Part shown: piece by piece, positions 7,878-60,932 of the stretch
Numbering within the stretch: position 1 is the first letter of the stretch
Layout of the letters: every line of letters starts with the position of its first letter
NCBI GenBank assembly: GCA_044892525.1
Contig: CM097887.1
Coordinates: 101,906,397-101,970,396, forward strand
Reading direction: 5' to 3'
Source of the DNA: Schmidtea polychroa
Taxonomy: Eukaryota
Length of the DNA stretch: 64,000 nt
Notes under the pieces: model-generated
Seen by the model: the letters and a program-made list of their open reading frames with translations, nothing else
The model's database searches: none
Told to the model about the DNA's origin: nothing
Program-made: the position numbers and the translations under genes

Positions 7878-10800
7878 TCAAAATAAAATACGCTTTATCG
7901 TTTTCGAAGCAGCTGAGACAGTATTTCGTCCAGTTAGAATTATATGATTAGGAATTGCTTGAACCATTTCGCTCGAGTATAGATAATCCAACGTACCAAA
8001 AAATAACTTAGTTAGGCAAATATTGCGTGGTAAGTATGAGCACCATATTGGAGCTGTATATGCTGTAGCTGCAAATAATCCAGAGACGATAATTGGATTT
8101 CGAATCATTCTTTGATAAGTTTGTTGAAACAAATTTGGAGAATTAACATGTGAAATAGAATCTAATTAAATATATATTATTAAGTTAGAAAAAGATTTCA
8201 ATCATTGTATTAATTGTAATTACAAAAAATGACTTGCATATCTCCAATTTGCGACATCCATATATTACGTACAAATCGAGTTGAAAAGGAGGTTTTAAAG
8301 TTTGGAAAGGAAAATTTTTGGCGTTAAACGAAAAATATTGAATTTTTATAGATCACCTCCTTTGGATATTAGCACTGGAATGATAAATGAAATTTGGTTT
8401 TTATATCTGCAGCTTGATTAACTTATTTTGTATATGTCAAACAGCGAATTTTAGGTTTATGTTTTAATGATTGTATCACCGAAATTATAATTAATTTGTA
8501 TTTTCAAGAAGCTCGGTATCAATTTACAAATATTACATTTGTTATATGCCGAATTTTACTTTTGGCAATTACATAAATTTTTTTAATTCTGCACATTTTA
8601 ATACAACCTCAAAATAACTATGCCTTTCTATTTATCTTCAATCATTTTATTCCTCTACTCATTCTTTAATTTTCTAATAGCATAATTAAATATTCATACA
8701 ACAATAAAATAAACATGAATGAATGAATTGGACATGAATAATTAATTTACTGCCTGCTATTAACTCCAAAATAATTTATTTAGGGCATTTTATGTGAAAT
8801 ACCGAAATTTATTTATTTTGGATTACAAGTGAAACTTAGATTCTAATTATTGGTGTCTCGGTTTGGATCCACTATATTATCACTTTGGTCACGTCTTCTC
8901 TTCAAATAACTATACCAGAGCTTTCCAACCGGTGTGTCGCGACAATTTAGTGTGTCGGCAGCGCTGCATAGGTGTATATGAAATACAATACATATATATA
9001 GTCCGTCGTGTTTTAGCTGCAAGAACGCTTGTTTACCCTATTCATTAGTTAATCGTTGGAATTCGATATTTATATTTAAATATGTTTCATTGGCTCTTGT
9101 ATAACGGTTTACCATATGGCGTAAGTTGTATGACGTCTGGTTTTCTGGTAAAACTGATTTGCTGTGTCGCGAAATGATGGAAGTCTAAAATATGTGTCAC
9201 AAGCATGAAAAGGTTGGAAAGAACTGAACTATACAGTCACATCAGGTCTCTGGTTACTACGCTTTCATATATAAAATTAAACACGAATACAAAATACTCA
9301 CTATTTTACTCTAATTTGTGATCCATAAATGTCATTCTGTTCTATAGATCTTTCTTGCAACCTTGATTTCATCGGCTTCGTATTTTATTCCCCCTATTGA
9401 ATTTAGTAAATTTCATTGAAATTTCTATGTTCAGTGATTAAAATTCTCGTTTATTCGATGGAAATACCTCCATCTTTATTTTAGTTTCTAAACAAACAGT
9501 CAATTTCGATTGATTTACTAAAATTTGACAAATTACTAATTGTAAATGTACAATTCTTACCACTCTATAATATTGTTTTACAATACTATAATACTAACAT
9601 ATTTGAGCGAATTTTTATAATCATAAATCGAATCCCCTTTAAAGGGACATATTAAATTTTAAATTTAGGTTAAAAAAATTCACGATTTCCTAGTTTTTTC
9701 CGAAGATCAACTTCGGACAGCAAAGTTCAGGACAATGTGAAATAATAAAAAACTATTAAATTTATTAAAATTTGAGGATATATCTTACGAAATTGTGTTA
9801 TCATTATCTCTATAACTCAAAGTTGTCAAAATATTTTGTGTAAATTTTATCTAAAAATTTATGTAGATTTATTATAGTGCGTTTATTCATTACAACGATT
9901 CTACATATCGACATTTCGCATCCATTTTTTAATATATGTTGTGTTTGTGTGTTCAGTTTATTTTTTCTACCACTTTATCACTTTCTATATTAAATGCGTT
10001 TATTCATTCACAGGTCGGTCTGTGTCTATATAATATAAACTTATTAATTTTTTAAACATTTATAAACATTATATATTTATATATATATATATACACGTAC
10101 CAGCTGCCGCCATTATTTCAAATGACATTTCATGACATGAGGCCATTTGTGAAATTGGTAATTCTAAAACAGGTAAAATTTTCTTTTTCATTTTTAAGTC
10201 ATCTTTGTTAATTTCACAAGAAATTGTTGAACAATGTTCATCTAAAATAACTTCTTTACAATCTTCTAAAGTTTCATTATTTAAAATAAGTTGATCTGTT
10301 TCAGAATAAAAAGCGCTATCTGAATTAATTAAATCAATCTCCGAAGATATCTGACCATCATCGCTTTTATTGCATTCAAAAGATTTTCGTGTTGCACGCA
10401 TTTCTTCACAGCTTACTTGAATACTTTTGATTAATTTATCAAGAGATTCCATTGGGTCATCCTTTAGCTTTTTTTTGTTCGAATCTTTTTTGTTCGAACG
10501 TGTTTCATTTTTAGATTCAAATGAAGTTGGTAAATTTCCCGTTGACGCGTCTTGTACGGCTTCATTATACGATGACGTTTCAATTGCAGGTAAAAAAGTA
10601 GAATATGATGATCCTGTGAAGCTATTGTTTAAAAAGTTTTGATTTTCATCAAGTATATCTGTTTTATCAATAGGTCTAAATGTCGTATGAAAAACTTCAT
10701 CTTCACTACAAGTTTCGTCATTGATATGATTATTAAGTGATGTCTTTCTTTCCGGTTTGCAAATATCCACTACTTCATTTAAACTGCTGGAATTACTTTT

Positions 10801-11717
10801 AGTCTTTATAAGGTTTGGACTAAATTCCTTTTGATTGACAATTACTGGAACTTCTTGCTCATATTCTAGTTGATTTTTACATTCACTATTAATATCATTC
10901 CAGGAATAATACTTTATTATCCCATTAGGCAAAGTATCTATGGATGCATTTTTTAATAAATCAGTCGGAGGTTCACTTATGCCTCTACTATTCATTAAAA
11001 ACTTCATTGCTTTTCTGTTAATATTTTCACTTTGATTTCCAATATCAGAAGAAGCAGTCATTATAGTACTGGAAAAACTAACAACATTATTGATAACATT
11101 TTTCACATTATATTTTGCTCGTTTCACTTTTGGACTATGCAAGCAACTGGAAGATCGAATCACTTTACTAGCTTTAGCTTTAAAAACTTCAATTTTAGCT
11201 CTGTGTTTTTCAGTTTTTGCAATTGTAGCAGTTAGAATAACTGGAGAATGGTCACTAGATGAAATAGTCATTTCCTTTCCGTCAGTCGATATGCTTTCTC
11301 TATTAATTATCACTTCACTTTTTCGACTTCCACTGCCAGTGCTAGCTGAACTATTTAAACTCAAACCAGAGTCACGAGCTTTCTTTGACCGCCTTTTAAA
11401 AAGAGAATTCAAAGACAACTTTGATGAATCGACTTTTGCACGAAGACCGACAGAATGAGGCATATCTTCATTTCTAATTCCATCAATTTCTGAAACATTG
11501 ATATTCGGCAATCTGACATCCTGATGAGAACTTGATGTATTTTCAACTTCTTCTTTATGTATTCTGTGCAAAGTTCTTTTTTCGGATTCAAATTTTGATG
11601 GCAAACTGTTAAAAAATGTTTTAAATTTTGATGGTGATTTCCTTCCGGAATTCGCGATTGAAATTGATAGAGAGGCTTTTGTTTGGCTTTCTCCACTAAA
11701 GTCATTACTGCTTTTAT
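7878..11717 (-). CDS. Uncharacterised Ser/Lys/Asn-rich protein; large exon 11717-10101 spliced to terminal exon 8161-7878; 5' exon(s) not located
   Basis: The 511-aa ORF stays open upstream to a tag|at acceptor at 11717. It has a phase-1 donor g|gtacgt at 10101/10100 and a phase-1 acceptor tag|at at 8162/8161, giving ...MAAAD-SISHVNSPNLFQQ...KRILF*. A stop-free 1.6-kb frame is unlikely by chance in AT-rich DNA. Confidence 0.75.
8916..9226. mobile_element. hAT-type MITE, 311 bp, in intron of the orphan gene
   Basis: TIR cag(ag/tt)ctttccaacc (13/15); perfect 8-bp TSD aactatac (8908-8915 and 9227-9234). Confidence 0.9.
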
Positions 11718-14347
11718 CTATAATAAAAGATAAATTTCTATAAGTATTATTTAAAATAAAATTAATATTATTTATTTATTATATTTAAAAAGTATTTTTA
11801 TATAATTAATGTACAAATACGACTCTAGAAAGTAAAGGGGATTATTTAAAATTTTAAGTTTATTAAGCAATTCTTTTTATATTATTAAACAGAGAGCAGT
11901 CAGAGCAGCGTCGCCGTTTTTGAAATATAATTATAATGGCCTCCTTAATTTAATTATAATAATAATAATAATTTCACGAGTCACGTCCGTGGCTTTAGCA
12001 CCGCGAACGAACGCAAAAAATCAAGAGGTGTCGAAAATGGAAATCTTTGACAACGTAACGTCATTATTGGCTCTAAAAATAAAGAGAAATTAAACTTTCG
12101 AGAAAAATGATGACACTGAGCTGGTAGAATAAGAAATTTGCTTTCTAAATTCATACAAAATCTTTTAAAACACAAACAAATGGCAGCAAGATATAGAATT
12201 GAAATAAACGGACTTATGCCTTAGCCTAATATGCGGAGTGGATAAAGAAGACTCGTACATAAATTAAATAAGTGAATCATTGGAATTTTAAAGACAAAAC
12301 AATGAATACCTATAGGTAAATATTAGTGAATTTGTTTTACCTAGTGAATAACATATCTATTATTCATATCTATATTCATATCTATAAATATCTATTACGA
12401 CGTGTTTTTAAAGAAATTTACTGTTGAGATTCCGAGAATCTTAACTTGGTATTTTATATAAATAAATACAATGACACTGACTAGTAAATTCTTTTTAATA
12501 TAACAATTACAAAGGTGATAAAAAGCAAAAAAATATAATACTTTAATATTTTATGTGTGTAAGCGTTTGTATGATTTGTTTTGATGCTTTGTTTCGACTA
12601 CAGCTTCTTGAGCTCCGTGTGTGATTTGTATGGTCTAATTTATATTACAATAACAATTACTGAATTTGCAATTCTTCTTAAATTACATTTTGGGTTTGAT
12701 CTGACAGTAAAAATTTATACTTATATTGAAAAAATATTGAAGCGTAACTCATCCCTTAAAATATTTTGGCACCTCATTTGAGCCTAACAAATTATTATTA
12801 TTTAATTATTTGTCATTTATTTAAACAATTACGCACTTAGAAACTCAAGTGCCTTTAAAAATATCTTGGATGCCATCATTAGAACATTTATTCCCGGACA
12901 GTTTTATCTATCCTGGGATCTTTATTTATTGTATTTAAATGTATATTTTATTGATTTTTAAAAAAAAACAAAGACCATAATGCACCTAATGTTTCATCAT
13001 TTAGACCAAATCTCAGTTTAATGCAAAAGTTTCCAGATGATAAAAAGACTCTTTCGGACTCCACTGAAGTCACAGGAATCGTTGATAGTTGTTCATAAAT
13101 GTTTTGGAGAAAATATCTCTATTTAAAATTGGGAATTAAAATTACAATCTCGTTTTTTATCAGGCTTTCAAATCAATTTTGGTTTCCGATCAATTTAGAA
13201 GGAAAGATTGATGAGGCAATTAATAATCTGTTGAGAATAACATTATTAAGAAGTGTAACTCACCGTGGAACACATCGTTAATTTTGGTGTGGAAAAAGGA
13301 GAAACAGGATGTCAGGCTGTGTCTAGATTTCAGACAGTTAAATTTAGTATCGGTGAGACAGGCTTTCACAATGCCAAATATATCAGAATTATTAGATAAA
13401 CTAGGAGAGCTCAGTATTTCACTTCGATTGACTTGGGTAATGCATTCTATCAAGTTGAACTTGATGAAGAATCAAAAGAAAGGACAGCTTTTTCAACGAA
13501 TGTATGTCAATTTATTTTTAATAGAATGCCTTATGGAAATAGCAGCAGCAGCAGGTACGTTTTAGGAGTTCATGCTGAAACTGCTGGAAAACAGAGTTGG
13601 TACGGTAGTTTACTTGAATGGCATCCTAATATTCACCAATTCAATCAATGAACACTCAAGTTCTAGAGGACGTATTAAAGAGAATAGAGGAAGCTGATTT
13701 GAGAATTAGTTCGGAGAAATGTCACATTTTAAAAAAAGAGGTTAAGTTCCTGGGGCACATTATCTATAAAAATGTCATTCAGGCAGACCCTGCAAGAACA
13801 GAGTCAATACGATCGCTCCAAAGACCAAAATTTATCAAGAGTTTAAGAAGCTTTCTAGGGATATGTAATTATTACTGGAGATTTATTGAAGGATACTCAG
13901 AAAAATCGAGAGCACTAGAGGAACTTTGTGGGAAGAATAAAGAAAAGAAACTAGTATGGACAGATAACTGCGATAAAGCGTTTAACGAGATGAAAAGGCC
14001 ATTGACGTCAACATCAGAGTTGGGTTTCCCCGATGTCAATAACGAGTTTATTTTAGAATCAGACGTCAGTTTTGATACAATCGGTGGGGTATTATCACAG
14101 TTGGACGACGGTGGGCATGAACGGGATATAGTGTATGGATCGCACGCAATGGACAACCACGAAAAAGGATATTGCATAACGAGAAAGGAGTTATTAGCAA
14201 TTTACTATTTTTGCCAACACTTTAATCACTATCTGTAAGGGGGAAGATTTATATTACGCACAGACCAAAAAGCGATCACAATCATGTTGAAGACAAACAA
14301 GCACAATTCAAGACTTGGATCAACTTTCCTAGTAGTTTTGATATAAA

Positions 14348-15212
14348 TGTTGGGGTTCAGTAGGAACCGGAATTAAAGGTTTTGAAATTAAATAATAATT
14401 AATTACTAAAATTAGAATTATAATATAAATAGTATTTAAAAATTACTAAAATTGGAACTAAAATATAAATAGTAATAAATAATTACTAAAAATAGATTTC
14501 TAACAAAAATAGTAATTATTTAAAAATATATAATAAAAATAGTAATTAAATAATTACTATTAATAGAATTAGAATAAATAAATTTATATAAATAGTAGAT
14601 GAAAAATTAGATGAGGGGACGAATTGGAGATAAGTAGATAAGAGAGAAAACCACAGTAGTTAAAAATAGACAAGAAGGAATCAATTGGATTTGGAAAAAA
14701 ACTAATTCTTGTCATTTGATATTCAACCAAACTAATTTGGAAATTTCACATCGTCAAATCTGATTGGAGATTTACAGTAGTTATTAAAATTCCACATCGA
14801 TCGAAAATTAATTTTAACTATTCACGAACTGGAATTATTTATTGCAATATTTTTGGAGTAATTTAGACCAAAGGAAGAAGATTATATTAGTTAGTTTTTT
14901 AGTATCAATATCTAAATAATTATAAATATATATACATATATAGAAGGGTTTATTTGATTAAATAAAAATCTAAATAAGGGAAACCATAACGTCAGCACGT
15001 ATTTTTGTGTTGTTTCGTTATTAATTTTTGTTTGAAAAAGAGTTAACCAATTTCTGGGTTAGCTCCATCGCGTAAAATTTGGTAAACTTCCCTATCTCTT
15101 TTCCGTTCACCTATATCGGGCTGTTGGCGCATTTGGGGCCAGCCTTGATCCTTAGTAATACTCTTTAGGGCGGTTTGTATAACCGTTTTCTGTACTTATA
15201 GAGAGCAGCGTG

Positions 15213-15264
<52 letters not shown>

Positions 15265-15405
15265 GTGTAACTAACCTTTTATTGTTAAATAAATATTTAA
15301 AACATATTTCTTATTTATTTATTTACCTACGCGCATTATAAATTATTTGGAGTCAGATTAGACGTCTTTTGTGTTAGTTCGAATACATACCCATCGAACC
15401 TAACA
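14348..15405 (-). mobile_element. Solo-LTR-like insert, 1058 bp, inside Gypsy pol
   Basis: TGTT...AACA termini with 4-bp TSD taaa (14344-14347 and 15406-15409). Removing it restores the frame SSFDIKIKYRQGTKHANADMLSR. It shares the tctgactcc motif about 50 bp from the 5' end with the inserts at 34421 and 41061. Confidence 0.8.
15214..15262. repeat. (AT)n microsatellite
   Basis: Direct inspection. Confidence 0.9.
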
Positions 15406-15869
15406 TAAAAATAAAATACAGACAAGGGACAAAACACGCTAACGCAGATATGCTATCAAGGAAGACATATAGAACATGTACACAATGTTTATTAATACAC
15501 GAAGATCCAAAGGAGGGCAAGCTAAAGACCAGAAGGATTAATGTGGTAGATAACTACGAGAAGATCGAATAACAAGAGAATAATACAGAGATAAGACAAA
15601 TAAAAGAAGAGATTATCCGAGACGCTTCATTGTAGTTTATTCTAGAATACAGTATAGTGAAGACAAAGGAAAGGAAAATATGAATCCCTGAAGATAGACG
15701 TCACGAGGTGATAAAGACAATCCACAGTTTACTTTTTCATGCGGGAGTCGAAAAAGCGATTTCGTATATGGGAAACAACTATGATATGAAAAATATGAAA
15801 GAAATAGTAAACAAAATAATTAAGGAATGCGAGCCGTGTCAAAGAGTAAACTACAAAAGAGGAAATGAT

Positions 15870-15877
<8 letters not shown>

Positions 15878-15941
<64 letters not shown>
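15878..15941. repeat. (AT)n microsatellite inside Gypsy integrase region
   Basis: Direct inspection; produces the spurious YIYIYI ORFs. Confidence 0.9.
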
Positions 15942-15944
<3 letters not shown>

Positions 15945-16779
15945 TGAAACGTTTAGGAGAAAGAAATATATAGTTACCATAATTGATCAAATTAGTAGAT
16001 ATATAGTACTACGATAATAAGGCAAGATGAAGAGACAATAAAAGAAACTTTCATGTGAGATTGGATATTAAGATTTGGACCACCAATGGAAATCCATATA
16101 GATTTTGGGAAAGAATTCGAATCGAGATTAATATCAGAAATGATAAGGTCGATGGGAATAGAACTTTGCTTTTCAAGTCCATATCATCATAATACGAGCG
16201 GTATCATGGAGATTTAATTCAGAACGATAAGGGACTACATAAATACGTCACTAAAGGAGACGAAAAACAGATTGGACAGAAATATTGCCAGAAATAGAAT
16301 TTACACCGAATGCAACAATACAGAAGTCGATCGGGAAGAGTCCAGTAAAGGTAATATTTGGACGTAAAATATTTAGAGAACGCTGGCACTCAAGGCATGG
16401 ATCGCAAATCAGAAAGTCGAATCTAAAAGAAGGACTTCTCGAATTTTTCGGTCTTTATTCTTTATCAATATCACCTGATGCTCAACTCTTTCCCCATTAA
16501 CCTTATCCGTGATGTGCTTGCCATTAAAATGGAGGCTCCACTCTTCCTTTTGTAATTCCTGTTGATATTGTTTTTTTAGTTTGTCAGCGGCATTGATAGT
16601 TGCCCTGTAAACTCCGGAAACTGATGGCGATGGTATATTTATTATTATACAATGTATATATTTTAGAAGTATGCCAGATAATCTAATCTCAGTTAACATA
16701 TTGGGATCTTGATATTGGTTTTATGCTTTTTAGGGACATACTAAATGAATTAACTCTGTTTTCAGTTTTAGTAAAATTT

Positions 16780-19700
16780 AACGAAGGCCAACATCACGAG
16801 AGAAGAAATCAGAAATTTAGCAAGGGTATATGAGGCACGAGAAGGTTATGATGCAAAAGAACGATTGGATGAAGTTTAGGCAGTAGCTAAATCAACATAT
16901 GCAAACGTTGCTCAAGATAAACAGAAGTAGTGGACTCAAAAATCATCTTTTGATAACAGAATATATTCATGTCGTCAACCAGAAAAGTGTTATCAATATA
17001 GAAATGAAAGAAACGAAAGACAAATTGATAAAGTGAAATCTGTGGCAGAACAATATAATGAAAGGACAACTACTGATCGTAGACCACCACTGTTAGTTTC
17101 AATGAAACATATCGCGAGAAAGGTTTATGATAGATGTTGTGGTTTACCTGAGCCAGCAGAAGAAAGATTAAGACCTGGTCAATGCTTTTGTTGTGGACAA
17201 AGTGATCATATGCGATTTGAGTGTCCGTTGAAGGACAAATGCTTAATATGCTGTAAAGAAGGTCATTTATTTATAATTTGTAATTTGTTAGTAAATTCAA
17301 GAAGTAATACTTAAAGATCGAAACGAAGAGTGTATTGTATGCACGAAGATGACGACGATAGATCAGAAGAATTGATAGAACCAGTCATGCATAATGTTAA
17401 GAGAAAAAAAACCAAGAAGACCCTGTTGTTTACATTTCGTCAGTAGGGTCGAGACAGTAGATGATTATAAAAAACGAAATGTTGTAACGAGGGATGTGAT
17501 GTTTAAGAAGGGTGATGATAGGAAGAGGAGTACGATGGAAATAAATGAATTTTATGATGAAATGCTATGGGATTCAGGAGCTTCAATCAGTGTGATTGGC
17601 AGTCCGACATTGATGGAAAGCAGAGTACGGTTGAGTGGAGTATTTTCAAAAGAAGACGAGAAACCTCTCGGAAGCGTAAATATCTTTGCAAAATGAAACA
17701 AATATCGAGAATTGAATGTTATTATTGTCAAAAAAATTCATCCAGATTTCATAGGAGGGTAGACACCATGAGCATATTTGGCATGGAGCTTAAAGAAGTC
17801 AATAATATTGATGCCGCATTGGTTACTAAGAGATTTACAGATTCTGATCGGTTAGAGTTGGCGTTATCGACGCTCAAGTTGGAAAGAAATTCGAATATCT
17901 AAGTTTAATATCTAAGTTTAGCAACATTTTTATGGTATCGAGTTTTGACTTAGGTCATACAAAAGTAATAACACATGAAATAACCACTTCAGGTCCTCCT
18001 ATTTTACAAAATCCCAGAAGACAACCCATGCATTTAGAAAGCAAAATTGAAGAGTTAGTAAAGAATTTATTAGAAGCTGGAATTGTGAGAAAATGTCAGA
18101 GTCCGTGGAACACACCACTTGTGATAGTTGGAAAACCAGATGGTTCTGTAAGAATGTGCCTAGATTTTAGGTTATTAAATTCAGTCACAGAAAAGTTTTC
18201 ATTTCCGATGCCAGACATGCAGTTGTTATTGGATTGTCTCGGCAAGTCAAAATTATTTTCATCAATTGAGTTAGGTCAGGCCTATTATCAAGTAGAGTTG
18301 CATGAAAATTCCCAAACGAAGACGGCATTTAGTACAAAAGAGGGACAGTTCTGTTTTAACAGGTTACCATTTGGTTTTTCAACAGCCCCTGCCACCTTTC
18401 AGAAATTGATGCATCAGATATTGGAAGGATTAATTTTTAAAGGAGTGGTTGTATATCTTGATGACATTTTAATATATGCAGAAAATAAGTAAACTAATGA
18501 TAAACTTCTATTTGAAGTGTTCACACGAATTAGAGATGCAGGTTTGAAAGTTAATCCTGAGAAATGCAAATAAAAGAAAGATTTCAGAAATTGAAAATGC
18601 AACCGAACCAAAAAGTGTCACAGAATTGAGATCATTCTTAGGTTTAACGAATTATTATCGACGGCTTGTTAGGAATTATTCAATGATAGCAGCATCTTTG
18701 TATGCAGCCACGACAGGTAATGATAAAATGATTGTTTGGAATGAAGAATGTAGAAAAAGTTTTATCAATTTAAAGAAGCACCAATATTAGAATTTCCAAG
18801 GGCAGATCGACTATTTATTATTAATACGGATGCTAGTTTTGGAGCCATAGGTGCAGTTTTATCTCAGATTAAGGAAGACAGTACTGAAGGAGTGATAGCA
18901 TATGGTTCAAGTCATTTGACAACACATGAAATGGGATATTGTGTTACTAGAAAAGAGTTGTTGGCACTCCACGAGTTTATTGTACATTTCAGACAATATT
19001 TATATGGCAGAAGATTTGTAGCCAGAACAGATCACAAGTCATTAGTGTTTATGAACACTACAAAGAAACCAATAAGCCCACAGTTTCAAACATGGATAGC
19101 AAATTTATCTGAATACGATTTTGAGTTACAATATAGGAAGGGAGAAGAACATGGAAATGCAGATGGTATGTCTCGTTTAAATAATACGATATGCGCTCAT
19201 TGTCAGATGAACCACAAGGATGCCAAAGAAACAAAGTGTAGAACTCGGTACATAAATAGTCTACAAGGAAGTTCAAACATTATGGAAATGATTAAACAGA
19301 AGCAAAACGAAGACAAAATTATTTCAGAAATCATATCACATCTTAATGGAAATGAGGCTCATATATCTTATGAAACAATCAGTAGTAATATTTTCAAGTA
19401 TTTAAAAATATTACAGATACAAGAAGACGTATTGATGATTAATACAGATGGGAAAATTGCAGTTGTAGTACCTGGCACGTACGTAAAAACATTTGTAAAT
19501 TATTTTCATGTTGAATTATGCCATCTGGGCATAAAGGAGACCTTATGTTATTTAAAAGATTTTTTCTTTTGGCCATCCATGAATCAGAGTATTACGGAAT
19601 GTATTAATAAATGCAAGATCTGTGCTAGTAGAAAGATTGATCAAGGAAGAACAGAGGAAATCCATTTGCCAAGAACAGGAGAAAGGTTTTTAGAACAGAT

Positions 19701-20480
19701 AGTAGTGGATATTGCATATATGGAAACAAAAGCAAGTAAGAAATATATGATAGTGGTAATAGATCGGTTTAGTAAATTGGTCAATTTATCAGCAACAAGT
19801 ACACAGGATGAATCAACGATTTTGAATGTCATTCTGAATAATTGGATATATCGGTTTGGTAGACCAGAAAGCATTCTTACAGATAGAGGAAGAATTTTTG
19901 AAGGATCAATGTTTCGTGATTGGATGAAAAAATTTGGCATAAAACAAGAATTTAGTTCACCATACCAACATCATTCAAATGGTTTAGCTGAACCAATAAT
20001 AAGAACAGTTCGGGACATGCTGGCAACATCATTGACAGATATTAGAACAGAAAATAATTGGTGCAAATTTTTACCAAAGATTGAATTTAGTTTGAATGCT
20101 ACAGTACAAAACTCGACAAACTTTTCACCTTTTGAAATTGTATATGGTCGGAAGATTAATTTATATTCTAGATTAGGACACATATAAAAAAGCAAAGAAG
20201 AAATTGTAAATAAAACAAAAACAAATTTAGAGAAAGCAGCGACAACAATGAAAAATAGAGATATAGACAAGCGAAGTACTCGGGTATTCATGGTGGGAGA
20301 GGAAGTATTAGTTCGTTTGGAACCACATAGACGAAAGAAGGAGGGAATTCAATATGAGGGACCTTACAAAATTTTAAAATTCTTATCACCAAGACAAGTT
20401 GAATTACAATTTCTAAACTCAATCAAATCAAGAAGAATTGAATCGCTGAAAAGATGCAAAGAAAATGCAGAGGAGGAGAG
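16780..20480 (+). mobile_element. Degenerate Ty3/Gypsy element (gag zinc knuckles, protease, RT, RNase H, integrase)
   Basis: CFCCGQSDHMRFEC and CLICCKEGHLFIIC knuckles; LWDSGASISVI protease; RT with SPWNTPLV, RMCLDFR.LN, LPFG...APATFQ and YLDDILI; RNase H TDAS and TRKELLAL; integrase H-H-C-C, VVDI, TDRG, NGLAE and GPYKI. The purine tract agaggaggagag precedes tgatg at 20481, a possible 3' LTR start. Confidence 0.95.
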
Positions 20481-47285: not shown

Positions 47286-49604
47286 TTAATTGCACAGTCC
47301 ATCATCGCAAGTTGTCCCCGAAATGCATTTTGAACACGCAGGCCCAGCTTCGTAAGGCAATTCATTGTTAACATTACCCCTAAATAAATTGGAAAGCTTA
47401 ATTAAATATTTTAACTTGACTCCTCTCACCCTGGAGCATAATTGCAAACTAAAAAATTTATCGAAAATCTCCCATATTTGCATTTTGAAATTCCACAGCC
47501 TATTTCCTTTGATTTCGCCCATATAACCTAAAATAAAAATATAAACAATTTATTTGAATCATTTATTTCAATTACAAAAATACATTAATTTACTTTTTTA
47601 ATACTTAAGCCGAGTATTTTCCAATTTCAGACTTTAGAGGATAAAAATATCTATTCAACTAAACAAACATGTATAACAAATTAACAAAAAATTTAGCACA
47701 AATGTCCAAAACGCACTAGATGCAAATAGTGAAAATAATTTCTTTTATTTCAATGAATTGTATGGAAAATGAAAGAAGAAAATAGGTTAAAATTTTCGAG
47801 AGTATCTCTTTTAAAGTTGTAAAATATAAATAATTTATACGACAACAATGCAAATGAACTATATTGTCATGAGAGTGCAAATTAATTAAAACTAACTAGT
47901 TGCAATCCCTGAATATTCTCAGAAGTAAGATTGTTTGCTAATTTATATTATAATTGCAATACTATATAGATCGATAAAATAATAATGGTATTGATTAATG
48001 ACAAACCAACGTACGTTTTTTGCTTATTAATTTTAATTAATTATTTCGGTTTCGAATATAAAAGTCAAAATATTTCCTGCAGGAAAGTGGAATGGGTACC
48101 AATTGGCAGCCATAATGAAATAAATAAATTTAAATAAAATTTAAATAAACAGCATAAATGCAAAAATTTTAATTAATTTTAAAAATTGTTTACCTCACCA
48201 ATGATAGCAAAATTAAAAAATCTCAGATAAAAAATGGACAAACAGAGGATCAATATGAATTATGGTGTTAAATTTTTTAGCGGGAAATATTTTAATGAAA
48301 ACCCGAAGTTTATAATAGCAGTTTATTTTATTTAGATTTGTCAGTTTTTTTGTCAAAACCAAGTGCACCGTGTGACATTCTTGCTTGAATAAAATTGGTG
48401 GTCTATTCTCTTTTTTGGTATATAGACAAATAAATAAAGAAATTGAAATTAGATCTTTGTATAAAAAGAAAAGTTATTTATTAAATAACAATTTACATTA
48501 AAAGTTTTTCAAATATTTCACATTTATTCAATGCATTTGGGTGAAATGAACGTCAGAATTTTTTAAATTACGATTTAAAAAAATTACACCAAGTAAATTA
48601 ACCCGCCAACTAGGATTATCTAAACTAATTTCTTTTTTACACACAATAAAATGACTATTATGTTATTATAGTTACTAAAAATTTAAATAAAAACTAAAAA
48701 TTTTGTTCGTTTTCCTTAAAAAATATATAAAAATGTATATCGGGTCCAATTGACTCTTATGCACAGATACCAGAAAATTTTCAATGCGCAGAGTGAAGGT
48801 TAAGCTAAATGCCAAAACTTAATTCAAAAAGAATTAGATAAATATTTATCCTCTTTTGTCAACTATCATAAATGNNNNNNNNNNNNNNNNNNNNNNNNNN
48901 NNNNNNNNNNNNNNNNNNNNNNNNNNNNNNNNNNNNNNNNNNNNNNNNNNNNNNNNNNNNNNNNNNNNNNNNNNNNNNNNNNNNNNNNNNNNNNNNNNNN
49001 NNNNNNNNNNNNNNNNNNNNNNNNNNNNNNNNNNNNNNNNNNNNNNNNNNNNNNNNNNNNNNNNNNNNNNNNNNNNNNNNNNNNNNNNNNNNNNNNNNTG
49101 CGTGTAATGCCCGCAAATATTTAAGGAACAGCTATTATCGAAATATGAGTATCCTTTGACTTCATTAAACCATAATTTTACACCTCTATAAAACATATCT
49201 ATAAAAATTCATTTAAATGAGTTTAAGACTTTAAAATGCTTCTTCCACTTGACATGGCAATATTTTGGCCAACCCATTCATGATGACTATAGCTACGTTC
49301 TTGCTTTGAGTCGTGCGAAAACTCGCAACTATCTGCTTTTCTTTGAGCTTTCACTGCTGATTCCTCATTCCATGTCTCGAAAAATAATAATAGTAACAAT
49401 AATTAATTATTAATTTCCACAAGTATTTACCATTTTTAACATGTTGGCAGCCGGTGGTTGACCCGAAACCATTCCTTTTGCAATCAGTTGCCTATATCTA
49501 TTGTGCTCAAAGAGGATTTCTTCTTTCTGTTTTTCATTTAGTTCACTCAGACAAATTCTTATAAAAATAAAATTAATTATTAAAATGAAGAAATTAGAAT
49601 TCAT
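47286..49604 (-). CDS. Secreted CAP/SCP-TAPS (venom allergen-like) protein, copy 1; exons 49604-49431, 49375-49230, 49185-49098, 47527-47430, 47379-47286
   Basis: Signal-peptide-like N-terminus; EHNRYR...QPPAANM; WVGQNIA; WFNE; CGHYTQ; VIWAKS..IGCG; VCNYAPGGN; C-terminal CxxC....C..GLC. The last base of exon 3 falls in an N gap. Confidence 0.92.
48875..49098. other. Assembly gap
   Basis: Run of N. Confidence 1.
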
Positions 49605-53402: not shown

Positions 53403-53817
53403 GTTGTACCATATAATTATTAAGACTATTGAAAGTTTATTTGCATTTTTTACTGTGTTGTACACCGGTTACATTCTTTAGGATTTTTATAGTGTGTTGT
53501 AAGTAATTGTAACATACAATACAGACAATTTATTTGTTATTTGGCCATTTTATCAGACTATTTTAATTTTAGTTATAAATAACTTTAATTATTGCCAGCA
53601 AATAATAAAAAGTTTTGAAAATTTATTTATAATTTCAAATTTTTTAAAAATATTTTCAAAAATATGTATTTTCAATTTTCGAAAATGTTATTCATTGTGT
53701 TTATTTAGTTTTATTACGTTTTCAATTTCTATATTAAATGATGTTTTTCTATGAAATATCAAATGTAACTCGGTAAACAAGAAATCAGTGCATAATTTTT
53801 ATTGTAATATTTTCAAA

Positions 53818-54805
53818 CTAATTACAAAGTCCATCAATACAAGTTGTTCCAATGGGACATTTAGAGCAAATATCTCCTACTTGGTATGGCTTCTCGTCGT
53901 TAGTATTACCGCTAATAATAAATTTTAATTAATATTAATGTAAATATAATTTACCCTGGGGCATAGTTGCAGACCAAAAATAAAATTGTTAAGCTCGAAT
54001 ATGGACAACTAGCCACTCCACAACCAAGTTCCTTTGATTTTGCCCACATTAACTGCATAAGAATAATATTAGAATGTTAAATATTATTTCTTTTCGAAAT
54101 GGTTATAACAATATACTGAAATTTTAGAAATAGAATAAAAATATCAAAATAATTTTTTCTCATAATTATTTTTCAATGAATATTTAATTTGATTATATTT
54201 TTTTAAAATAATTTCTAAATAATTAATTTATTAAATTTCAAAAGAATTTTTCCGTATAAAAATATAATTTATTAATTTAACATGAATTTAACAGTTACTT
54301 GTGTATAATGTCCACAAGATATTCCCGAGCAAGTACCAGAAGTATAAGAATATCCTGTAACTTCATTAAACCAAAGTTCGATACCCCTAAAAAATATTAA
54401 ATATAACATTTATATATAATTTACTTTGATATATTTTGTCCACTGAACATAGCTATGTTTTGTCCAACCCATTGGTAATCCCCATATGTCCGATCGCTCA
54501 TTGAATCATGGGAGAATGAACATTTATCTGCTAATGCCTGTGCTTTTGAAGCGGAATCAGAACTCCAAATCTGAATGAACAAAGTTATAAAAATAATAAA
54601 AATAATTTTTAAAATAATTTACTAATTTCAACATATCAGCTGCAGGTGGTTGACTTGTAACAAGACCTTTCGATACAATTTGCCTAAAACTGTTGTGAGC
54701 TTCCAGAAGTTGAGTTTTTTTATCTTCCGAAAGATCTCCATAACATAAAAAGAGATTACTTAGAATTACAACAATTGCAAGGATTGTATTATTCATTTCA
54801 GTCAT
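53818..54805 (-). CDS. Secreted CAP/SCP (VAL) protein, copy 2 (left palindrome arm); ATG at 54805 or 54796
   Basis: Reverse complement of copy 3; five exons; about 199 aa from the second ATG. Confidence 0.92.
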
Positions 54806-55534
54806 GAATTCGACAGACAATTATCACCAATTTATACATTTTCCCTTTTCGGTGATTGACTTGTTCAATCTGCTGTTTCATCTGTTTCCTTTTTTGTTAT
54901 GGAAAAGTTAAGCACGCAATTTTTAAATGAATAATTTTGTCAAATGTTCAAATATTGGAAAATAAAGTGTTTTCAATAGAAAAAATAATTTCAAAAGATG
55001 AAAACATTTTACTATAAAAGAATTCTATGAAATAATTGAGATTATGATAGGTAAAGAACAAAGGTACATTGTCACCCCTTTCATATCTTATGATGTAATA
55101 ATTTTTCATTATTTTACTGTAATTATTTCTTAAATTACTTTTGGACCTATAATCCTAATTTGGTTTTCTTTGCATGAGAGCATTTTAAAAAATTTGAAAA
55201 TCTTCTCTGATTCTCCTACTCTCATGTGAACCATACAGAACAAAGACCATCTAACCATGAAAAAATGGTCTTACAAAAATAAAAATTATATAATCTAAAT
55301 CAGAAAACTATTCCAAGACGTTTTCATCATAATAACTTTGAGCAGACCATCATTAATGGTTGAAAAATCGATTTTTAAATTTTAATTAAAAAACTTTCAC
55401 GTTTCTAATTTAGAAAAACTTAATGTAGATTAAAAAACCTTATAAATGATACATTATATATATTAAAAGAATTTTTTTTCGAATTTCACCACTGATTTCT
55501 TTTCCATCGTATTTATTAAAAAGCTTGAAGTTTT

Positions 55535-55536
<2 letters not shown>

Positions 55537-55608
<72 letters not shown>
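55537..55608. repeat. (AT)n microsatellite at the palindrome centre
   Basis: Direct inspection. Confidence 0.95.
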
Positions 55609-55610
<2 letters not shown>

Positions 55611-56230
55611 ATTCAGTTTTCAAGCTTTTTAATAAACATTACACACACACATATATATATATATATATTTTTTATTTGTACCGAAATTCAAATAAGTAAG
55701 TTTTCTATATCCTAATAATTATTAAAACAAATTTGGTATTTCAACAGATATTTTTTAACAAAGAATATTGGAATATTTTTCTGATTCAGAATATATAATT
55801 TTATTTTTGTAAGACCATTTCATCTTAAAATATGAAAGGGGTGACAAGGTACCTTTGATCTAGATGGCTCACATGTCTTTACTGTTTACATTTCTAAATT
55901 TTTAATAAAATCCATTTTAAATAAAAAGAGATTTTGAACTAATTTATTACTTGCTAAATATATCATGTAAATAAAGAAAGGAAACCTATCATAATCTCAA
56001 TTATTTCATAGAATTCTTTTATAGTAAAATGTTTTCATCTTTTGAATTTATTTTTTCTATTGAAAACACTTTATTTTCCAATATTTGAACATTTGACAAA
56101 ATTATTCATTTAAAAATTGCGTGCTTAACTTTTCCATAACAAAAAAGGAAACAGATGAAACAGCAGATTGAACAAGTCAATCACCGAAAAGGGAAAATGT
56201 ATAAATTGGTGATAATTGTCTGTCGAATTC

Positions 56231-57218
56231 ATGACTGAAATGAATAATACAATCCTTGCAATTGTTGTAATTCTAAGTAATCTCTTTTTATGTTATGGAG
56301 ATCTTTCGGAAGATAAAAAAACTCAACTTCTGGAAGCTCACAACAGTTTTAGGCAAATTGTATCGAAAGGTCTTGTTACAAGTCAACCACCTGCAGCTGA
56401 TATGTTGAAATTAGTAAATTATTTTAAAAATTATTTTTATTATTTTTATAACTTTGTTCATTCAGATTTGGAGTTCTGATTCCGCTTCAAAAGCACAGGC
56501 ATTAGCAGATAAATGTTCATTCTCCCATGATTCAATGAGCGATCGGACATATGGGGATTACCAATGGGTTGGACAAAACATAGCTATGTTCAGTGGACAA
56601 AATATATCAAAGTAAATTATATATAAATGTTATATTTAATATTTTTTAGGGGTATCGAACTTTGGTTTAATGAAGTTACAGGATATTCTTATACTTCTGG
56701 TACTTGCTCGGGAATATCTTGTGGACATTATACACAAGTAACTGTTAAATTCATGTTAAATTAATAAATTATATTTTTATACGGAAAAATTCTTTTGAAA
56801 TTTAATAAATTAATTATTTAGAAATTATTTAAAAAAAATATAATCAAATTAAATATTCATTGAAAAATAATTATGAGAAAAAATTATTTTGATATTTTTA
56901 TTCTATTTTTAAAATTTCAGTATATTGTTATAACCATTTCGAAAAGAAATAATATTTAACATTCTAATATTATTCTTATGCAGTTAATGTGGGCAAAATC
57001 AAAGGAACTTGGTTGTGGAGTGGCTAGTTGTCCATATTCGAGCTTAACAATTTTATTTTTGGTCTGCAACTATGCCCCAGGGTAAATTATATTTACATTA
57101 ATATTAATTAAAATTTATTATTAGCGGTAATACTAACGACGAGAAGCCATACCAAGTAGGAGATATTTGCTCTAAATGTCCCATTGGAACAACTTGTATT
57201 GATGGACTTTGTAATTAG
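56231..57218 (+). CDS. Secreted CAP/SCP (VAL) protein, copy 3; exons 56231/56240-56413, 56466-56611, 56650-56737, 56984-57081, 57125-57218
   Basis: AHNSFRQ, FSHD, WVGQNIA, WFNE, CGHYTQ, LMWAKS..LGCG, VCNYAPGGN and CSKCPIGTTCIDGLCN*; GT-AG introns of 52, 38, 246 and 43 bp. Confidence 0.93.
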
Positions 57219-57706
57219 TTTGAAAATATTACAATAAAAATTATGCACTGATTTCTTGTTTACCGAGTTACATTTGATATTTCATAGAAAAACATCATTT
57301 AATATAGAAATTGAAAACGTAATAAAACTAAATAAACACAATGAATAACATTTTCGAAAATTAAATAATCAATAAATTGTAAACATCGAAGCCCCTAAGG
57401 CGTAGAGTGTGAAAAAGTAATTTTAATCCTGTAGAATTGAATTAACATTTGGAAAATTAATCACCCGACTTTATAAAATAATAATGCTTAGTATTTCTAG
57501 TCAAAGAGTAATGAGCTTAAGCAGAAAAATCAACATTTCAAAAGATTTCTACATGATGATAATATAAATGCGTTGAAAGCATCTTATTTGGTCAGTAGTC
57601 GCGTTGCCAAAGTAATTTTGGGCAAACCATGGGCCAAGGATATCGCTTATTGCATGATATTAGAAAAACATGTTCAGATGGTGTATTAAGAGAAACCATG
57701 TCATCT

Positions 57707-58088
57707 GCGCGGACGTCAATTGCGCGGGTCNNNNNNNNNNNNNNNNNNNNNNNNNNNNNNNNNNNNNNNNNNNNNNNNNNNNNNNNNNNNNNNNNNNNNN
57801 NNNNNNNNNNNNNNNNNNNNNNNNNNNNNNNNNNNNNNNNNNNNNNNNNNNNNNNNNNNNNNNNNNNNNNNNNNNNNNNNNNNNNNNNNNNNNNNNNNNN
57901 NNNNNNNNNNNNNNNNNNNNNNNNNNNNNNACTCCGAGTCTATCCGACAAAATATTTTGTCCCCCTATGGGTAATGCTCACAAGGGTACTGCTCACGCTC
58001 AACAACTCACAAGGGTATTATTAAACAATTGACTACCCGCGCAGTTGGACCCGCGCAATTGGCGTCCGCGCAATTGACGTGCTACGGT
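57707..58088. mobile_element. Foldback-type element with inverted ends built from caattgcgcgg subrepeats; spans a gap
   Basis: Left tgcgcggacgtcaattgcgcgggtc is the near reverse complement of right gacccgcgcaattggcgtccgcgca. Confidence 0.55.
57731..57930. other. Assembly gap
   Basis: Run of N. Confidence 1.
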
Positions 58089-59352: not shown

Positions 59353-60659
59353 TCAAATGCACAGTGAATTGATACACTTTGTTTCACTTGGACATTTCGA
59401 GCATGTTGGTCCGCTTGCATATGGAGATTGGTTGTTAAAATTTCCTCTAAAAAGTATATAAATAAAATTATAAAAATGTAAATGGTTATATCTACCCTGT
59501 TCCATAATTGCATACAAGTAATATTACATTCCATTTTAAATGTTTGCATTTACTTGCACCACACCCAAGCTCTTTAGAATCAGCCCATATAACCTACGTT
59601 ATTTTATGTAATAATTAAGAAAATGGAATAATTAAATAAAGCAAGATTAAAACAATGTATAATTATAATTAGATATAAATCAAATGATCCTATTAATCCA
59701 TTAGTCTTGTTTTGACAGTTAGTTTCTGTATGCTTAATTAATTTGTTGCGATGGCATCTATTTTGAACAATAGTAGAGGAAGTTTGCATTCCTTAAATTC
59801 CACAGTAAATGCACAAACACGAAATTATATAAAAAATAATCTTAAAAAATTGAAGCAAAAATGCTACATAAAACGTCATTTAATTATCTTATGAAGTTTC
59901 AGAATATTCATCATTTTATATTTATCTGAAAAAAATTATTTATTAATTAAAAATTGACTTTTTATGTTCAATACTTAATGGTCAAAAGTTTCTAGTAAAA
60001 ACAAAATGGAAGCAATATTTTCAATATACAAAGTTACCCTCGAGATTTGAAATGATTAATGGCATCAGTTAAAAAATTTTGAAAATTATATAACAGGAGT
60101 GTAATTTATAATTCAAAAGCAATTAAAAATACTTGGGTATAATGACCACATGTTTTAATTGAGCATGAATTGTTTGAAAATGTGTATCCGGAATTTTCTT
60201 TGTACCACATTTCTACTCCCCTTAAAGAAAATAATCTAGAAATTCTTACAAATTAAAATATTACTTCACAAAATTGGTATCGGTAAACATGGCAATATTT
60301 TGCCCAACCCATTCGAAATTTGCATATTTGCGATCTGTCACATTGTCGTGGTTAAATTTGCATAAGTTCGCTGTGCGTTGTGCCTTGGAAGCAGATTCGG
60401 AGCTCCATTTCTTAAAAACGTATAATAAATTTAATCTTTTTAAAGCTAATATTCAGAAAATGTTTTATTAATTTTGATGACTTACCATTTTCATCATATT
60501 TGCTGCATTGGGCTGACTTCCTACTTTTCCACTAGCAACTAATTCTCTATACAAGTTATGAGCATCGAGAAGTTGATTCTTTTGTTCTTCACTAAGGTTA
60601 CCCCAGGCAGTCTTGACACAAATAAAAAATAAAGTTGAAATTAAAGTAAGACAATTCAT
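59353..60659 (-). CDS. Secreted CAP/SCP (VAL) protein, copy 4; exons 60659-60486, 60410-60265, 60220-60133, 59593-59496, 59446-59353
   Basis: Signal-peptide-like N-terminus; AHNLYR; FNHD; WVGQNIA; WYKE; CGHYTQ; VIWADSKELGCG; VCNYGTGGN; CSKC...C..SLCI*. Confidence 0.93.
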
Positions 60660-60932
60660 TCTATTATTTATTATAGACTGAGAAATCTCTGAGTTTTTAT
60701 AGAGTTCATGCGTGCATGACCGAACAAGATTTATTAATTTTGTAGGAAATCCAAATTATGTTTTTCATTTATTAAAATTTTTTTCATGATTTTTGAACTT
60801 TCAAACACGCAGACCTATAAGCTTGATTTAATTTATCTCAGTTTAATTGAGTTTTTGTTGAAGAAATGTTACCGATTTAACATAAAATATTAATAAAATT
60901 TGTTGTGAATAACTGTTTTATAAATAGAAATT

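What the first reader, a model, noticed from the sequence alone, without database searches (positions are those of the whole stretch)
53674..57362. 3.7-kb palindrome holding two head-to-head secreted CAP/VAL genes, centred on an (AT)n tract
Seen: arms of exactly 1379 bp (53674-55052, 55984-57362), each holding a whole 5-exon VAL gene plus about 250 bp upstream. They are almost identical, with at least 3 non-coding substitutions and no amino-acid difference noticed in the parts compared. The symmetry axis falls on a 72-bp (AT)n run. Established: long (AT)n runs extrude cruciforms and can trigger fold-back inverted duplication. Inference: this is a microsatellite-centred fold-back duplication that doubled the dose of a secreted effector gene around a shared bidirectional promoter.
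Basis: partly seen in the sequence, partly recalled or inferred. Interest (0 to 1): 0.78.

Follow-up and report, generated by a model that had tools for sequence, protein, structure and literature searches.

The report
Small palindrome with twin CAP genes
Two letter-identical, head-to-head copies of a secreted-type CAP/VAL gene sit in a real-looking 3.7-kb inverted duplication, but the central (AT)n run is only an expanded loop of a common mobile element, so this is an ordinary small gene palindrome, not a microsatellite-seeded one.

Summary
The arms 53674-55052 and 55984-57362 are 1379 bp each, with 3 non-coding mismatches. Each carries an intact 5-exon, 202-aa CAP-domain gene with identical coding sequence.

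- The arm axis (55518) lies 19 bp outside the (AT)36 run.
- That run is an expansion inside the hairpin of a high-copy MITE-like element. Eight other copies have the hairpin but no long AT run, and none has flanking inverted duplications.
- DNA between the hairpin and the arms is asymmetric, which argues against fold-back at the AT tract.
- The 931-bp spacer is a repeat mosaic. Next to both arms it keeps mirrored remnants of one low-copy repeat at about 91% identity, against 99.8% in the arms (p = 3.5e-9).

I therefore read this as an older, larger palindrome whose gene arms were kept alike by arm-to-arm gene conversion. Conversion would stop where indels break the homology.

Each gene has its own duplicated 247-bp upstream region with a TATA box, so no shared promoter is needed. 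The genome looks planarian, which makes "effector" doubtful. A second CAP palindrome without an AT run lies 40 Mb away, and the scan has noted similar gene palindromes elsewhere in this genome.

The parts
53674..55052 (-). Left arm of the palindrome (1379 bp)
   Evidence: Ungapped reverse-complement match to 55984-57362 with 3 mismatches
55984..57362 (+). Right arm of the palindrome (1379 bp)
   Evidence: it has only two full-length places in the 781-Mb genome
53818..54805 (-). Left CAP/VAL gene; exons 54623-54805, 54425-54570, 54299-54386, 53955-54052, 53818-53911
   Evidence: Mirror of the right-arm gene model; CDS identical; tblastn
56231..57218 (+). Right CAP/VAL gene, 202 aa; exons 56231-56413, 56466-56611, 56650-56737, 56984-57081, 57125-57218
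   Evidence: Canonical GT..AG introns and an open 609-nt CDS. Exon 4 hits Pfam CAP PF00188 at E 8e-5, above the cut-off. Exons 2 and 4 hit solved CAP proteins colinearly. CAP1-CAP4 motifs are present and residues 7-20 are hydrophobic
56200..56205 (+). TATAAA 26 bp upstream of the right ATG (mirror copy at 54831-54836): probably each copy's own core promoter
   Evidence: its function is inferred
55053..55983 (.). 931-bp spacer, a mosaic of dispersed repeats
   Evidence: Own-genome searches; self-comparison
55441..55640 (+). Copy of a high-copy MITE-like hairpin element
   Evidence: 750 first-look candidates, with scored copies at 73-96% identity on all four large contigs. Alignment by eye with 8 copies. 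DNA hairpin -37.8 kcal/mol, z = -10
55537..55608 (.). (AT)36 run inside the loop of that element
   Evidence: the other copies have only ATATAT-type seeds at this point
55055..55417 (+). Low-copy dispersed repeat 'R3' on the left of the spacer, including pieces a (55055-55099) and b (55263-55316)
   Evidence: About 10 other loci at 69-88% identity, none in an inverted pair
55757..55861 (-). Mirrored R3 remnant on the right: b' 55768-55820 (92.6% to b) and a' 55817-55861 (88.9% to a)
55862..55983 (.). 122-bp right-only segment that breaks the homology exactly at the inner end of the right arm
   Evidence: Part of it resembles the context upstream of R3 in locus L038
57212..57345 (+). Fragment of dispersed repeat 'R1' that forms the 3' UTR with AATAAA at 57233 (mirror copy 53691-53824)
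   Evidence: Six copies at 88-96% identity on other contigs; poly(A) signal
47289..49553 (-). Neighbouring CAP paralogue A (about 60% aa identity); an N run lies in one intron
   Evidence: tblastn; C-terminus ...GLCN* as in the twins
59359..60671 (-). Neighbouring CAP paralogue D (about 40-48% aa identity)
   Evidence: tblastn

Best explanation
This is a genuine small gene-bearing palindrome inside a four-gene CAP/VAL cluster. An inverted duplication copied the minus-strand gene, its upstream region and an adjacent R3 repeat array, producing a head-to-head twin. The duplication originally reached further inward than today's arms, to at least 55316 on the left and 55768 on the right. The inner parts then drifted to about 9% substitutions and acquired a 163-bp left-only and a 122-bp right-only indel. 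The 1379-bp gene-bearing arms stayed or became near-identical through arm-to-arm gene conversion, which stops where the 122-bp heterology interrupts pairing. The left copy is probably the parent. It lies in the same orientation as both neighbouring paralogues, and only on the left does the R3 repeat continue uninterrupted into the spacer. The central (AT)36 is a microsatellite grown from an ATATAT seed in the hairpin loop of a MITE-like element in the single-copy core of the spacer, and it is most likely a bystander. Each twin has its own duplicated promoter region. The net effect is two identical doses of a secreted-type CAP protein. What is shown: the anatomy, the gene model, the repeat identities and the step in identity. 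What is inferred: gene conversion, which copy is the parent, secretion and expression.
For: Arms and mismatches. Gene model and CAP identity. The cluster runs A(-), L(-), R(+), D(-). The spacer is a repeat mosaic and the AT run lies in a dispersed hairpin element. Mirrored R3 pieces lie next to both arm ends at 88.9% and 92.6% identity, while other R3 loci are never in inverted pairs. Step in identity: 3/1379 differences in the arms against 9/99 in the inner pieces, Fisher p = 3.5e-9; using non-coding arm sites only, p = 3.8e-7. A second CAP palindrome has 2652-bp arms, 19 mismatches and a 12.5-kb spacer without an AT run. Six DNA-type runs from two studies hold 71-91% of the stretch's sampled words. 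Arm-to-arm conversion that maintains over 99% identity is established for mammalian sex-chromosome palindromes (PMC8600007, PMC8981503, listed).
Against: Neither the reality of all four junctions nor gene conversion is therefore directly shown. The inner mirrored pieces total only 99 bp and belong to a repeat family with tandem-like sub-units, so their alignment is somewhat ambiguous; one unrelated copy matches 45 bp of b' equally well at 93%. With 1.4-kb arms this is far smaller than the classic conversion-maintained palindromes. An N run lies 369 bp beyond the right arm.
Confidence: 0.6

Rival explanations
1. This is a very recent one-step inverted duplication, made by double template switching or a fold-back with a 931-bp loop, with boundaries exactly at today's arm ends. 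The mirrored R3 pieces in the spacer are unrelated leftovers of a repeat-rich region, and no gene conversion is involved.
For: Arm identity is 99.8%, and two of the three differences might be homopolymer-border errors. The arm ends are sharp. Inverted duplications with a single-copy spacer are the known outcome of fold-back or template switching (PMC3907307; PMC10766183). R3 has tandem-like sub-units, which makes short matches easier to obtain.
Against: R3 has only about 10-25 detectable loci in 781 Mb. Two copies within 1 kb, mirrored and abutting both arm ends, are very unlikely by chance. Other R3 loci are not in inverted pairs. Piece a and piece a' match only each other in the genome.
Confidence: 0.17
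2. The (AT)n tract, or the hairpin element holding it, extruded a cruciform or stalled a fork and directly seeded a fold-back. It therefore marks the origin and centre of the palindrome.
For: The hairpin element lies almost exactly in the middle of the asymmetric core: 124 bp to its left and about 116-127 bp to its right, between 55317 and 55756-55767. It forms a very stable DNA hairpin. AT-rich palindromes are known fragile sites (review PMC7999016). Long AT runs occur only about once per 20 kb in this window.
Against: The arm axis lies outside the run. The sequences directly flanking the hairpin are not mirror images, although more distal ones still are at about 91% identity; fold-back priming at the hairpin predicts the opposite. 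0 of 8 other element copies and 0 of 4 other long AT runs have flanking inverted duplications. The second CAP palindrome lacks an AT run. The element could have inserted after the duplication.
Confidence: 0.1
3. This is an assembly artefact: a fold-back chimeric read or a misjoin created the second copy.
For: An N run lies 369 bp outside the right arm. The arms are almost identical. No read evidence was obtained.
Against: Fold-back chimeras give spacer-less palindromes that run to a contig end. Here there is a 931-bp asymmetric spacer, 368 bp of unique sequence beyond the right arm, and diverged mirrored remnants that an artefact cannot produce. A similar CAP palindrome exists elsewhere.
Confidence: 0.07

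Closest known systems
Gene-bearing palindromes of mammalian X and Y chromosomes, maintained by arm-to-arm gene conversion (PMC8600007, PMC8981503, PMC8327919)
   Same: Inverted arms with over 99% identity carry a multi-copy gene around a unique spacer. Arm identity is much higher than that of adjacent, once-homologous sequence.
   Different: The arms here are 1.4 kb rather than 10 kb to 1.5 Mb. The host is an autosome-like large contig of an invertebrate genome. Conversion is inferred from one genome and not shown by cross-species or population data.
Fold-back or template-switch inverted duplications with a single-copy spacer (Hermetz et al. 2014, PMC3907307; ODIRA, PMC10766183)
   Same: The structure is arm, spacer, inverted arm, and a hairpin-forming sequence is present in the spacer.
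   Different: It is interstitial with very short arms and has no terminal deletion or dicentric signature. Junction microhomology could not be established. The present arm boundary looks secondary, set by an indel, and not like the original breakpoint.
Platyhelminth group 1 venom allergen-like (VAL) proteins, CAP/SCP/TAPS superfamily (Chalmers and Hoffmann 2012, PMC3435950)
   Same: It is a single CAP domain of about 200 aa with all four CAP motifs, a hydrophobic signal-like N-terminus and a cysteine-rich mature part. It belongs to a large lineage-specific family, as described for turbellarians.
   Different: Group assignment by phylogeny and by the six conserved cysteines was not done. Turbellarian VALs have no parasitic 'effector' role.
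MITE or foldback short dispersed elements that carry or seed TA microsatellites
   Same: The element is short (about 170-200 bp), high-copy, has an internal hairpin and TA-rich insertion sites, and has an AT repeat grown inside one copy.
   Different: Most copies have a unique 5' part plus a hairpin, without clean terminal inverted repeats. The class and the target-site duplication are unresolved.

Membership tests
CAP / SCP-TAPS superfamily (Pfam PF00188) | Match to the CAP domain profile above the curated cut-off | tested here: met
   Exon 4 alone scores 23.9 bits against a cut-off of 21.1, E 8e-5, at profile positions 90-117. The spliced full-length protein could not be submitted because it has no reference.
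CAP / SCP-TAPS superfamily (Pfam PF00188) | Signature motifs CAP1 (PS01009), CAP2 (PS01010), CAP3 (HNxxR) and CAP4 (G[EQ]N[ILV]) | tested here: met
   Regular-expression hits at residues 135, 164, 37 and 97/105 of the 202-aa product.
CAP / SCP-TAPS superfamily (Pfam PF00188) | Sequence similarity to solved CAP proteins in colinear positions | tested here: met
   Exon 2 hits pseudecin, SmVAL4 (4p27) and Ves v 5. Exon 4 hits Ves v 5, triflin and SmVAL4. E values are 0.002-0.08 for queries of 32-48 aa.
CAP / SCP-TAPS superfamily (Pfam PF00188) | Alpha-beta-alpha sandwich fold | not tested
   No structure was predicted, because the spliced protein has no reference to hand in.
Platyhelminth group 1 VAL (secreted class) | N-terminal signal peptide | tested here: inconclusive
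   Residues 7-20 have mean hydropathy up to 2.65 and are followed by CYG/DL. No signal-peptide predictor was available.
Platyhelminth group 1 VAL (secreted class) | Six conserved disulphide cysteines and clustering with group 1 in a tree | not tested
   There are 10 Cys after the putative signal. No alignment with reference VALs was made.
Conversion-maintained palindrome | Inverted arms with over 99% identity around a unique spacer | tested here: met
   99.78% identity over 1379 bp, with a 931-bp spacer.
Conversion-maintained palindrome | Arm identity higher than expected from the age of the duplication | tested here: met
   Mirrored inner remnants show 9/99 differences against 3/1379 in the arms, p = 3.5e-9. 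This is indirect and comes from one genome.
Conversion-maintained palindrome | Concerted evolution seen across species or individuals | not testable with these tools
   No relatives of this genome are available.
Fold-back inverted duplication seeded at an AT-rich palindrome | Symmetry axis on the AT palindrome, with mirrored sequence starting at its base | tested here: not met
   The axis is at 55518 and the run at 55537-55608. The flanks 55317-55440 and 55641-55756 show no inverted similarity.
Fold-back inverted duplication seeded at an AT-rich palindrome | Short inverted microhomology at the spacer/arm boundary | tested here: inconclusive
   The present boundary coincides with an indel in a repeat array. 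The original breakpoint, about 55757-55768, is too diverged to read.
MITE-like dispersed element (for 55441-55640) | Short, high-copy and dispersed, with an internal or terminal inverted repeat | tested here: met
   750 candidate places, with copies on all large contigs. A hairpin is shared by 8 copies. Fold z = -10.
MITE-like dispersed element (for 55441-55640) | Defined terminal inverted repeats and a target-site duplication | tested here: inconclusive
   Insertion sites are TA-rich, but no clean target-site duplication or terminal inverted repeat appears in most copies. One copy (L024) is a full foldback.

The most novel reading that the evidence does not exclude
Hairpin-forming mobile elements such as the one holding the (AT)36 act as replication barriers. 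These barriers repeatedly seed template-switch inverted duplications in this planarian-type genome. The resulting small palindromes, then homogenised by gene conversion, would be a general route by which secreted gene families such as CAP/VAL expand there.
Probability: 0.1. Interest if true: 0.55.

Novelty: new member of a known kind. Interest (0 to 1): 0.3.

Why it matters
The locus is a compact example of a gene-bearing palindrome outside vertebrate sex chromosomes. Diverged inner remnants sit beside near-identical arms, which gives an internal yardstick for gene conversion. Together with a second CAP palindrome and other palindromes noted in the same genome, it suggests that inverted duplication plus homogenisation is a regular mode of gene-family growth in this repeat-rich genome. 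On its own it is ordinary. It does not show a new mechanism, and the attractive microsatellite-seeding idea is not supported.

Tried and rejected
- **Read evidence.** The look-up of sequencing runs failed three times as busy and then listed 15 runs. One local script compared window flanks that include them with the window itself.
- **Independent contigs.** I looked up an ORF crossing the left inner junction and the exon-4 ORF with the look-up of encoding contigs. Nothing is on record for either.
- **Full-length protein searches.** Homologue search, structure prediction and a Pfam scan of the whole protein were left out. The spliced 202-aa protein has no reference and I did not type it. The exons were searched separately instead.
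- **Naming the organism.** A protein-atlas search with a 511-aa ORF gave only sub-threshold hits. The literature search for planarian palindromes returned nothing relevant.
- **Composite foldback transposon.** I considered that the whole spacer is one foldback transposon with R3-type inverted ends. I rejected this because other R3 loci have no inverted partner.
- **Transposon-supplied C-terminus.** I considered that the R1 fragment supplies the C-terminus. I rejected this because paralogue A ends with the same ...GLCN*.
- **Independent dating.** R1 differs from its nearest copy at 4/113 sites, against 9/99 for the inner remnants. I judged this too weak to date conversion and did not compute a test.
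Full report
**Observation**

The segment 53674-55052 is the reverse complement of 55984-57362, 1379 bp each, with three mismatches. Two are in intron 3 (54127/56909 and 54205/56831). One is 184 bp upstream of the start codon (54989/56047). Identity collapses immediately outside both ends. This is the only long high-identity repeat in the 64-kb window, and the arm has just these two full-length places in the 781-Mb genome. Two of the three differences sit at the border of an A run and a T run, so they may be polishing errors.

**The genes**

Each arm holds a five-exon gene with canonical GT..AG introns. On the right the exons are 56231-56413, 56466-56611, 56650-56737, 56984-57081 and 57125-57218. 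The 609-nt coding sequence is identical in the two arms.

Evidence that the 202-aa product is a CAP protein:
- Exon 4 alone passes Pfam's CAP (PF00188) cut-off.
- Exons 2 and 4 independently hit solved CAP proteins (Ves v 5, triflin, pseudecin, Schistosoma VAL4) at colinear positions.
- All four CAP signature motifs are present.

The N-terminus has a hydrophobic core at residues 7-20, consistent with a signal peptide, and ten cysteines follow it. This fits the secreted group 1 class of platyhelminth VALs (PMC3435950). Group membership itself was not tested.

The twins lie in a cluster of four CAP genes: paralogue A at 47289-49553 (-), the left twin (-), the right twin (+) and paralogue D at 59359-60671 (-). 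The right, plus-strand copy is therefore the odd one out.

**The spacer and the AT run**

The arm axis is at 55518. The (AT)36 run is at 55537-55608, so the axis falls 19 bp outside it.

More importantly, the run is not a feature specific to this locus. Window 55441-55640 is a copy of a short dispersed element with 750 first-look candidates in the genome; the scored copies are 73-96% identical and lie on all four large contigs. Eight other copies, read side by side, share a 5' part of about 75 nt followed by a hairpin of about 100 nt. The loop of that hairpin contains only ATATAT-type seeds. In the window copy the loop has been replaced by (AT)36. The element folds into a very stable DNA hairpin of -37.8 kcal/mol, z = -10.

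Control comparisons:
- None of the eight other copies is flanked by an inverted duplication within 1.5 kb.
- None of four other AT runs of 30 bp or more, in the DNA I hold, is flanked by one either.

**Degenerate inner symmetry**

The rest of the spacer is also repeat-derived.
- The left side, 55055-55417, is a low-copy dispersed repeat that I call R3. It has about 10 other loci at 69-88% identity and tandem-like sub-units.
- The right side carries a mirrored R3 remnant at 55757-55861.
- Piece a (55055-55099) matches a' (55817-55861) at 88.9%, and these two match nothing else in the genome.
- Piece b (55263-55316) matches b' (55768-55820) at 92.6%.
- On the left, a and b are separated by 163 bp. 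The ends of that interval share an ATGA microhomology with the fused a'b' junction.
- On the right, a 122-bp segment (55862-55983) separates a' from the arm.
- Other R3 loci never occur as inverted pairs.

The mirrored arrangement abutting both arms is therefore best explained by the duplication itself. The palindrome originally reached inward at least to 55316/55768. R3 continues uninterrupted into the spacer (to about 55417) only on the left, which marks the left copy as the probable parent.

**The step in identity**

The arms differ at 3 of 1379 sites, or 3 of 770 non-coding sites. The mirrored inner pieces differ at 9 of 99 sites. Fisher's test gives p = 3.5e-9, and p = 3.8e-7 for non-coding arm sites only.

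One duplication event cannot produce both values. Either the arms were homogenised after the event by arm-to-arm gene conversion, or the inner pieces do not derive from the duplication. The high-identity block ends exactly where the 122-bp heterology begins, and beyond it only 45 bp of homology remain before the next indel. That is what a conversion tract limited by heterology would look like. This is the established behaviour of much larger palindromes on mammalian sex chromosomes (PMC8600007, PMC8981503). Here it remains an inference from a single genome.

**Why not a fold-back at the AT tract**

Fold-back priming at a hairpin predicts mirrored sequence starting at the base of the hairpin. 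Here the 124 bp to the left of the element (55317-55440) and the roughly 116-127 bp to its right (55641-55756/55767) show no inverted similarity, while more distal pieces are still about 91% alike.

A simple fold-back also yields arms that run on to a break or a chromosome end, with a disomic spacer (PMC3907307). It does not yield 1.4-2 kb interstitial arms. A double template switch (PMC10766183) fits the interstitial structure better. The hairpin element could have stalled a fork, but nothing here shows that, and it may have inserted later.

**Promoter and 'effector'**

Each arm contains its own 247-bp upstream region, with TATAAA at 56200 (mirror copy at 54831-54836), 26 bp before the first ATG. 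The two start codons are 1425 bp apart. A shared bidirectional promoter is not needed.

The genome has 781 Mb, 29% GC, four very large contigs, introns of about 40-55 bp (38-53 bp for three of the four; intron 3 is 246 bp), Gypsy-type retroelement remains and at least 91 CAP-domain matches. From memory this matches a planarian such as Schmidtea. Earlier notes of the scan also call it planarian-type. I could not test this. If it is true, 'secreted effector' in the parasitological sense does not apply.

**Is it real?**

An N run lies 369 bp outside the right arm.

Several features argue against a fold-back chimera or a misjoin:
- the spacer is asymmetric and 931 bp long;
- 368 bp of unique sequence lie beyond the right arm;
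- the mirrored remnants are diverged;
- the arms are not perfectly identical.

Six DNA-type runs from two studies hold 71-91% of the stretch's sampled words. Two probable RNA runs hold 10-13%, compatible with exon-only coverage. Neither set was laid on the sequence.

**Recurrence**

A paralogous CAP pair about 40 Mb away on the same contig forms another palindrome: 142734023-142736674 (+) and 142749197-142751848 (-). Its arms are 2652 bp with 19 mismatches and no gaps. The genes lie tail to tail around a 12.5-kb spacer, which has no AT run of 16 bp or more. Earlier notes of this scan describe other gene-bearing palindromes in the same genome that were also read as homogenised by gene conversion (s1-223937, s1-225475). 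One note makes the same 'stepwise divergence' point for this very spacer (s1-237220), which my tests support.

**Verdict**

This is a real-looking, ordinary small gene palindrome: a new member of a known kind. The microsatellite-seeded fold-back, the shared promoter and the effector reading are not supported.

Noticed in passing
G000:C3:142734023-142751848 (loci L033-L036): A second CAP-gene palindrome. It has 2652-bp arms at 99.28% identity (19 mismatches, no gaps). The genes lie tail to tail around a 12.5-kb spacer that contains other inverted repeats but no long AT run.
   Followed up: partly
G000:C2:149372475-149548709 and unplaced contig C559: A head-to-tail array of about 70 or more CAP-domain units with a strict 2589-bp period, all on the minus strand and nearly identical in score. 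About 13 further units lie on contig C559.
   Followed up: no
window 57212-57345 and mirror 53691-53824: The 3' UTR of both twins starts within a few bases of the stop codon. It is a fragment of a dispersed repeat (six copies at 88-96% identity on other contigs) and carries the first AATAAA, at 57233.
   Followed up: partly
window 57697-58081: The 200-N run at 57731-57930 is flanked by an unusually GC-rich 34-nt inverted repeat (57697-57730 and 58048-58081, 88% complementary).
   Followed up: no
window 13648-20187: Remains of Gypsy-type LTR retrotransposons on the plus strand: reverse transcriptase, RNase H and integrase domains. Two long AT runs, at 15215-15262 and 15876-15941, lie between the fragments.
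   Followed up: partly
window 10069-11604 (-): A 511-aa open reading frame, exceptional for 29% GC DNA. It has no Pfam match and only sub-threshold atlas neighbours.
   Followed up: partly
window 47289-49553 (-): CAP paralogue A has its exons split by the 224-N run at 48875-49098. Exon 3 ends 3 bp from the Ns, so the gene model there cannot be completed.
   Followed up: no
window 55634-55668: A compound (CA)4(TA)9 microsatellite lies directly after the hairpin element. It is followed, at 55670-55740, by yet another dispersed repeat with about 20 copies at 79-85% identity.
   Followed up: partly
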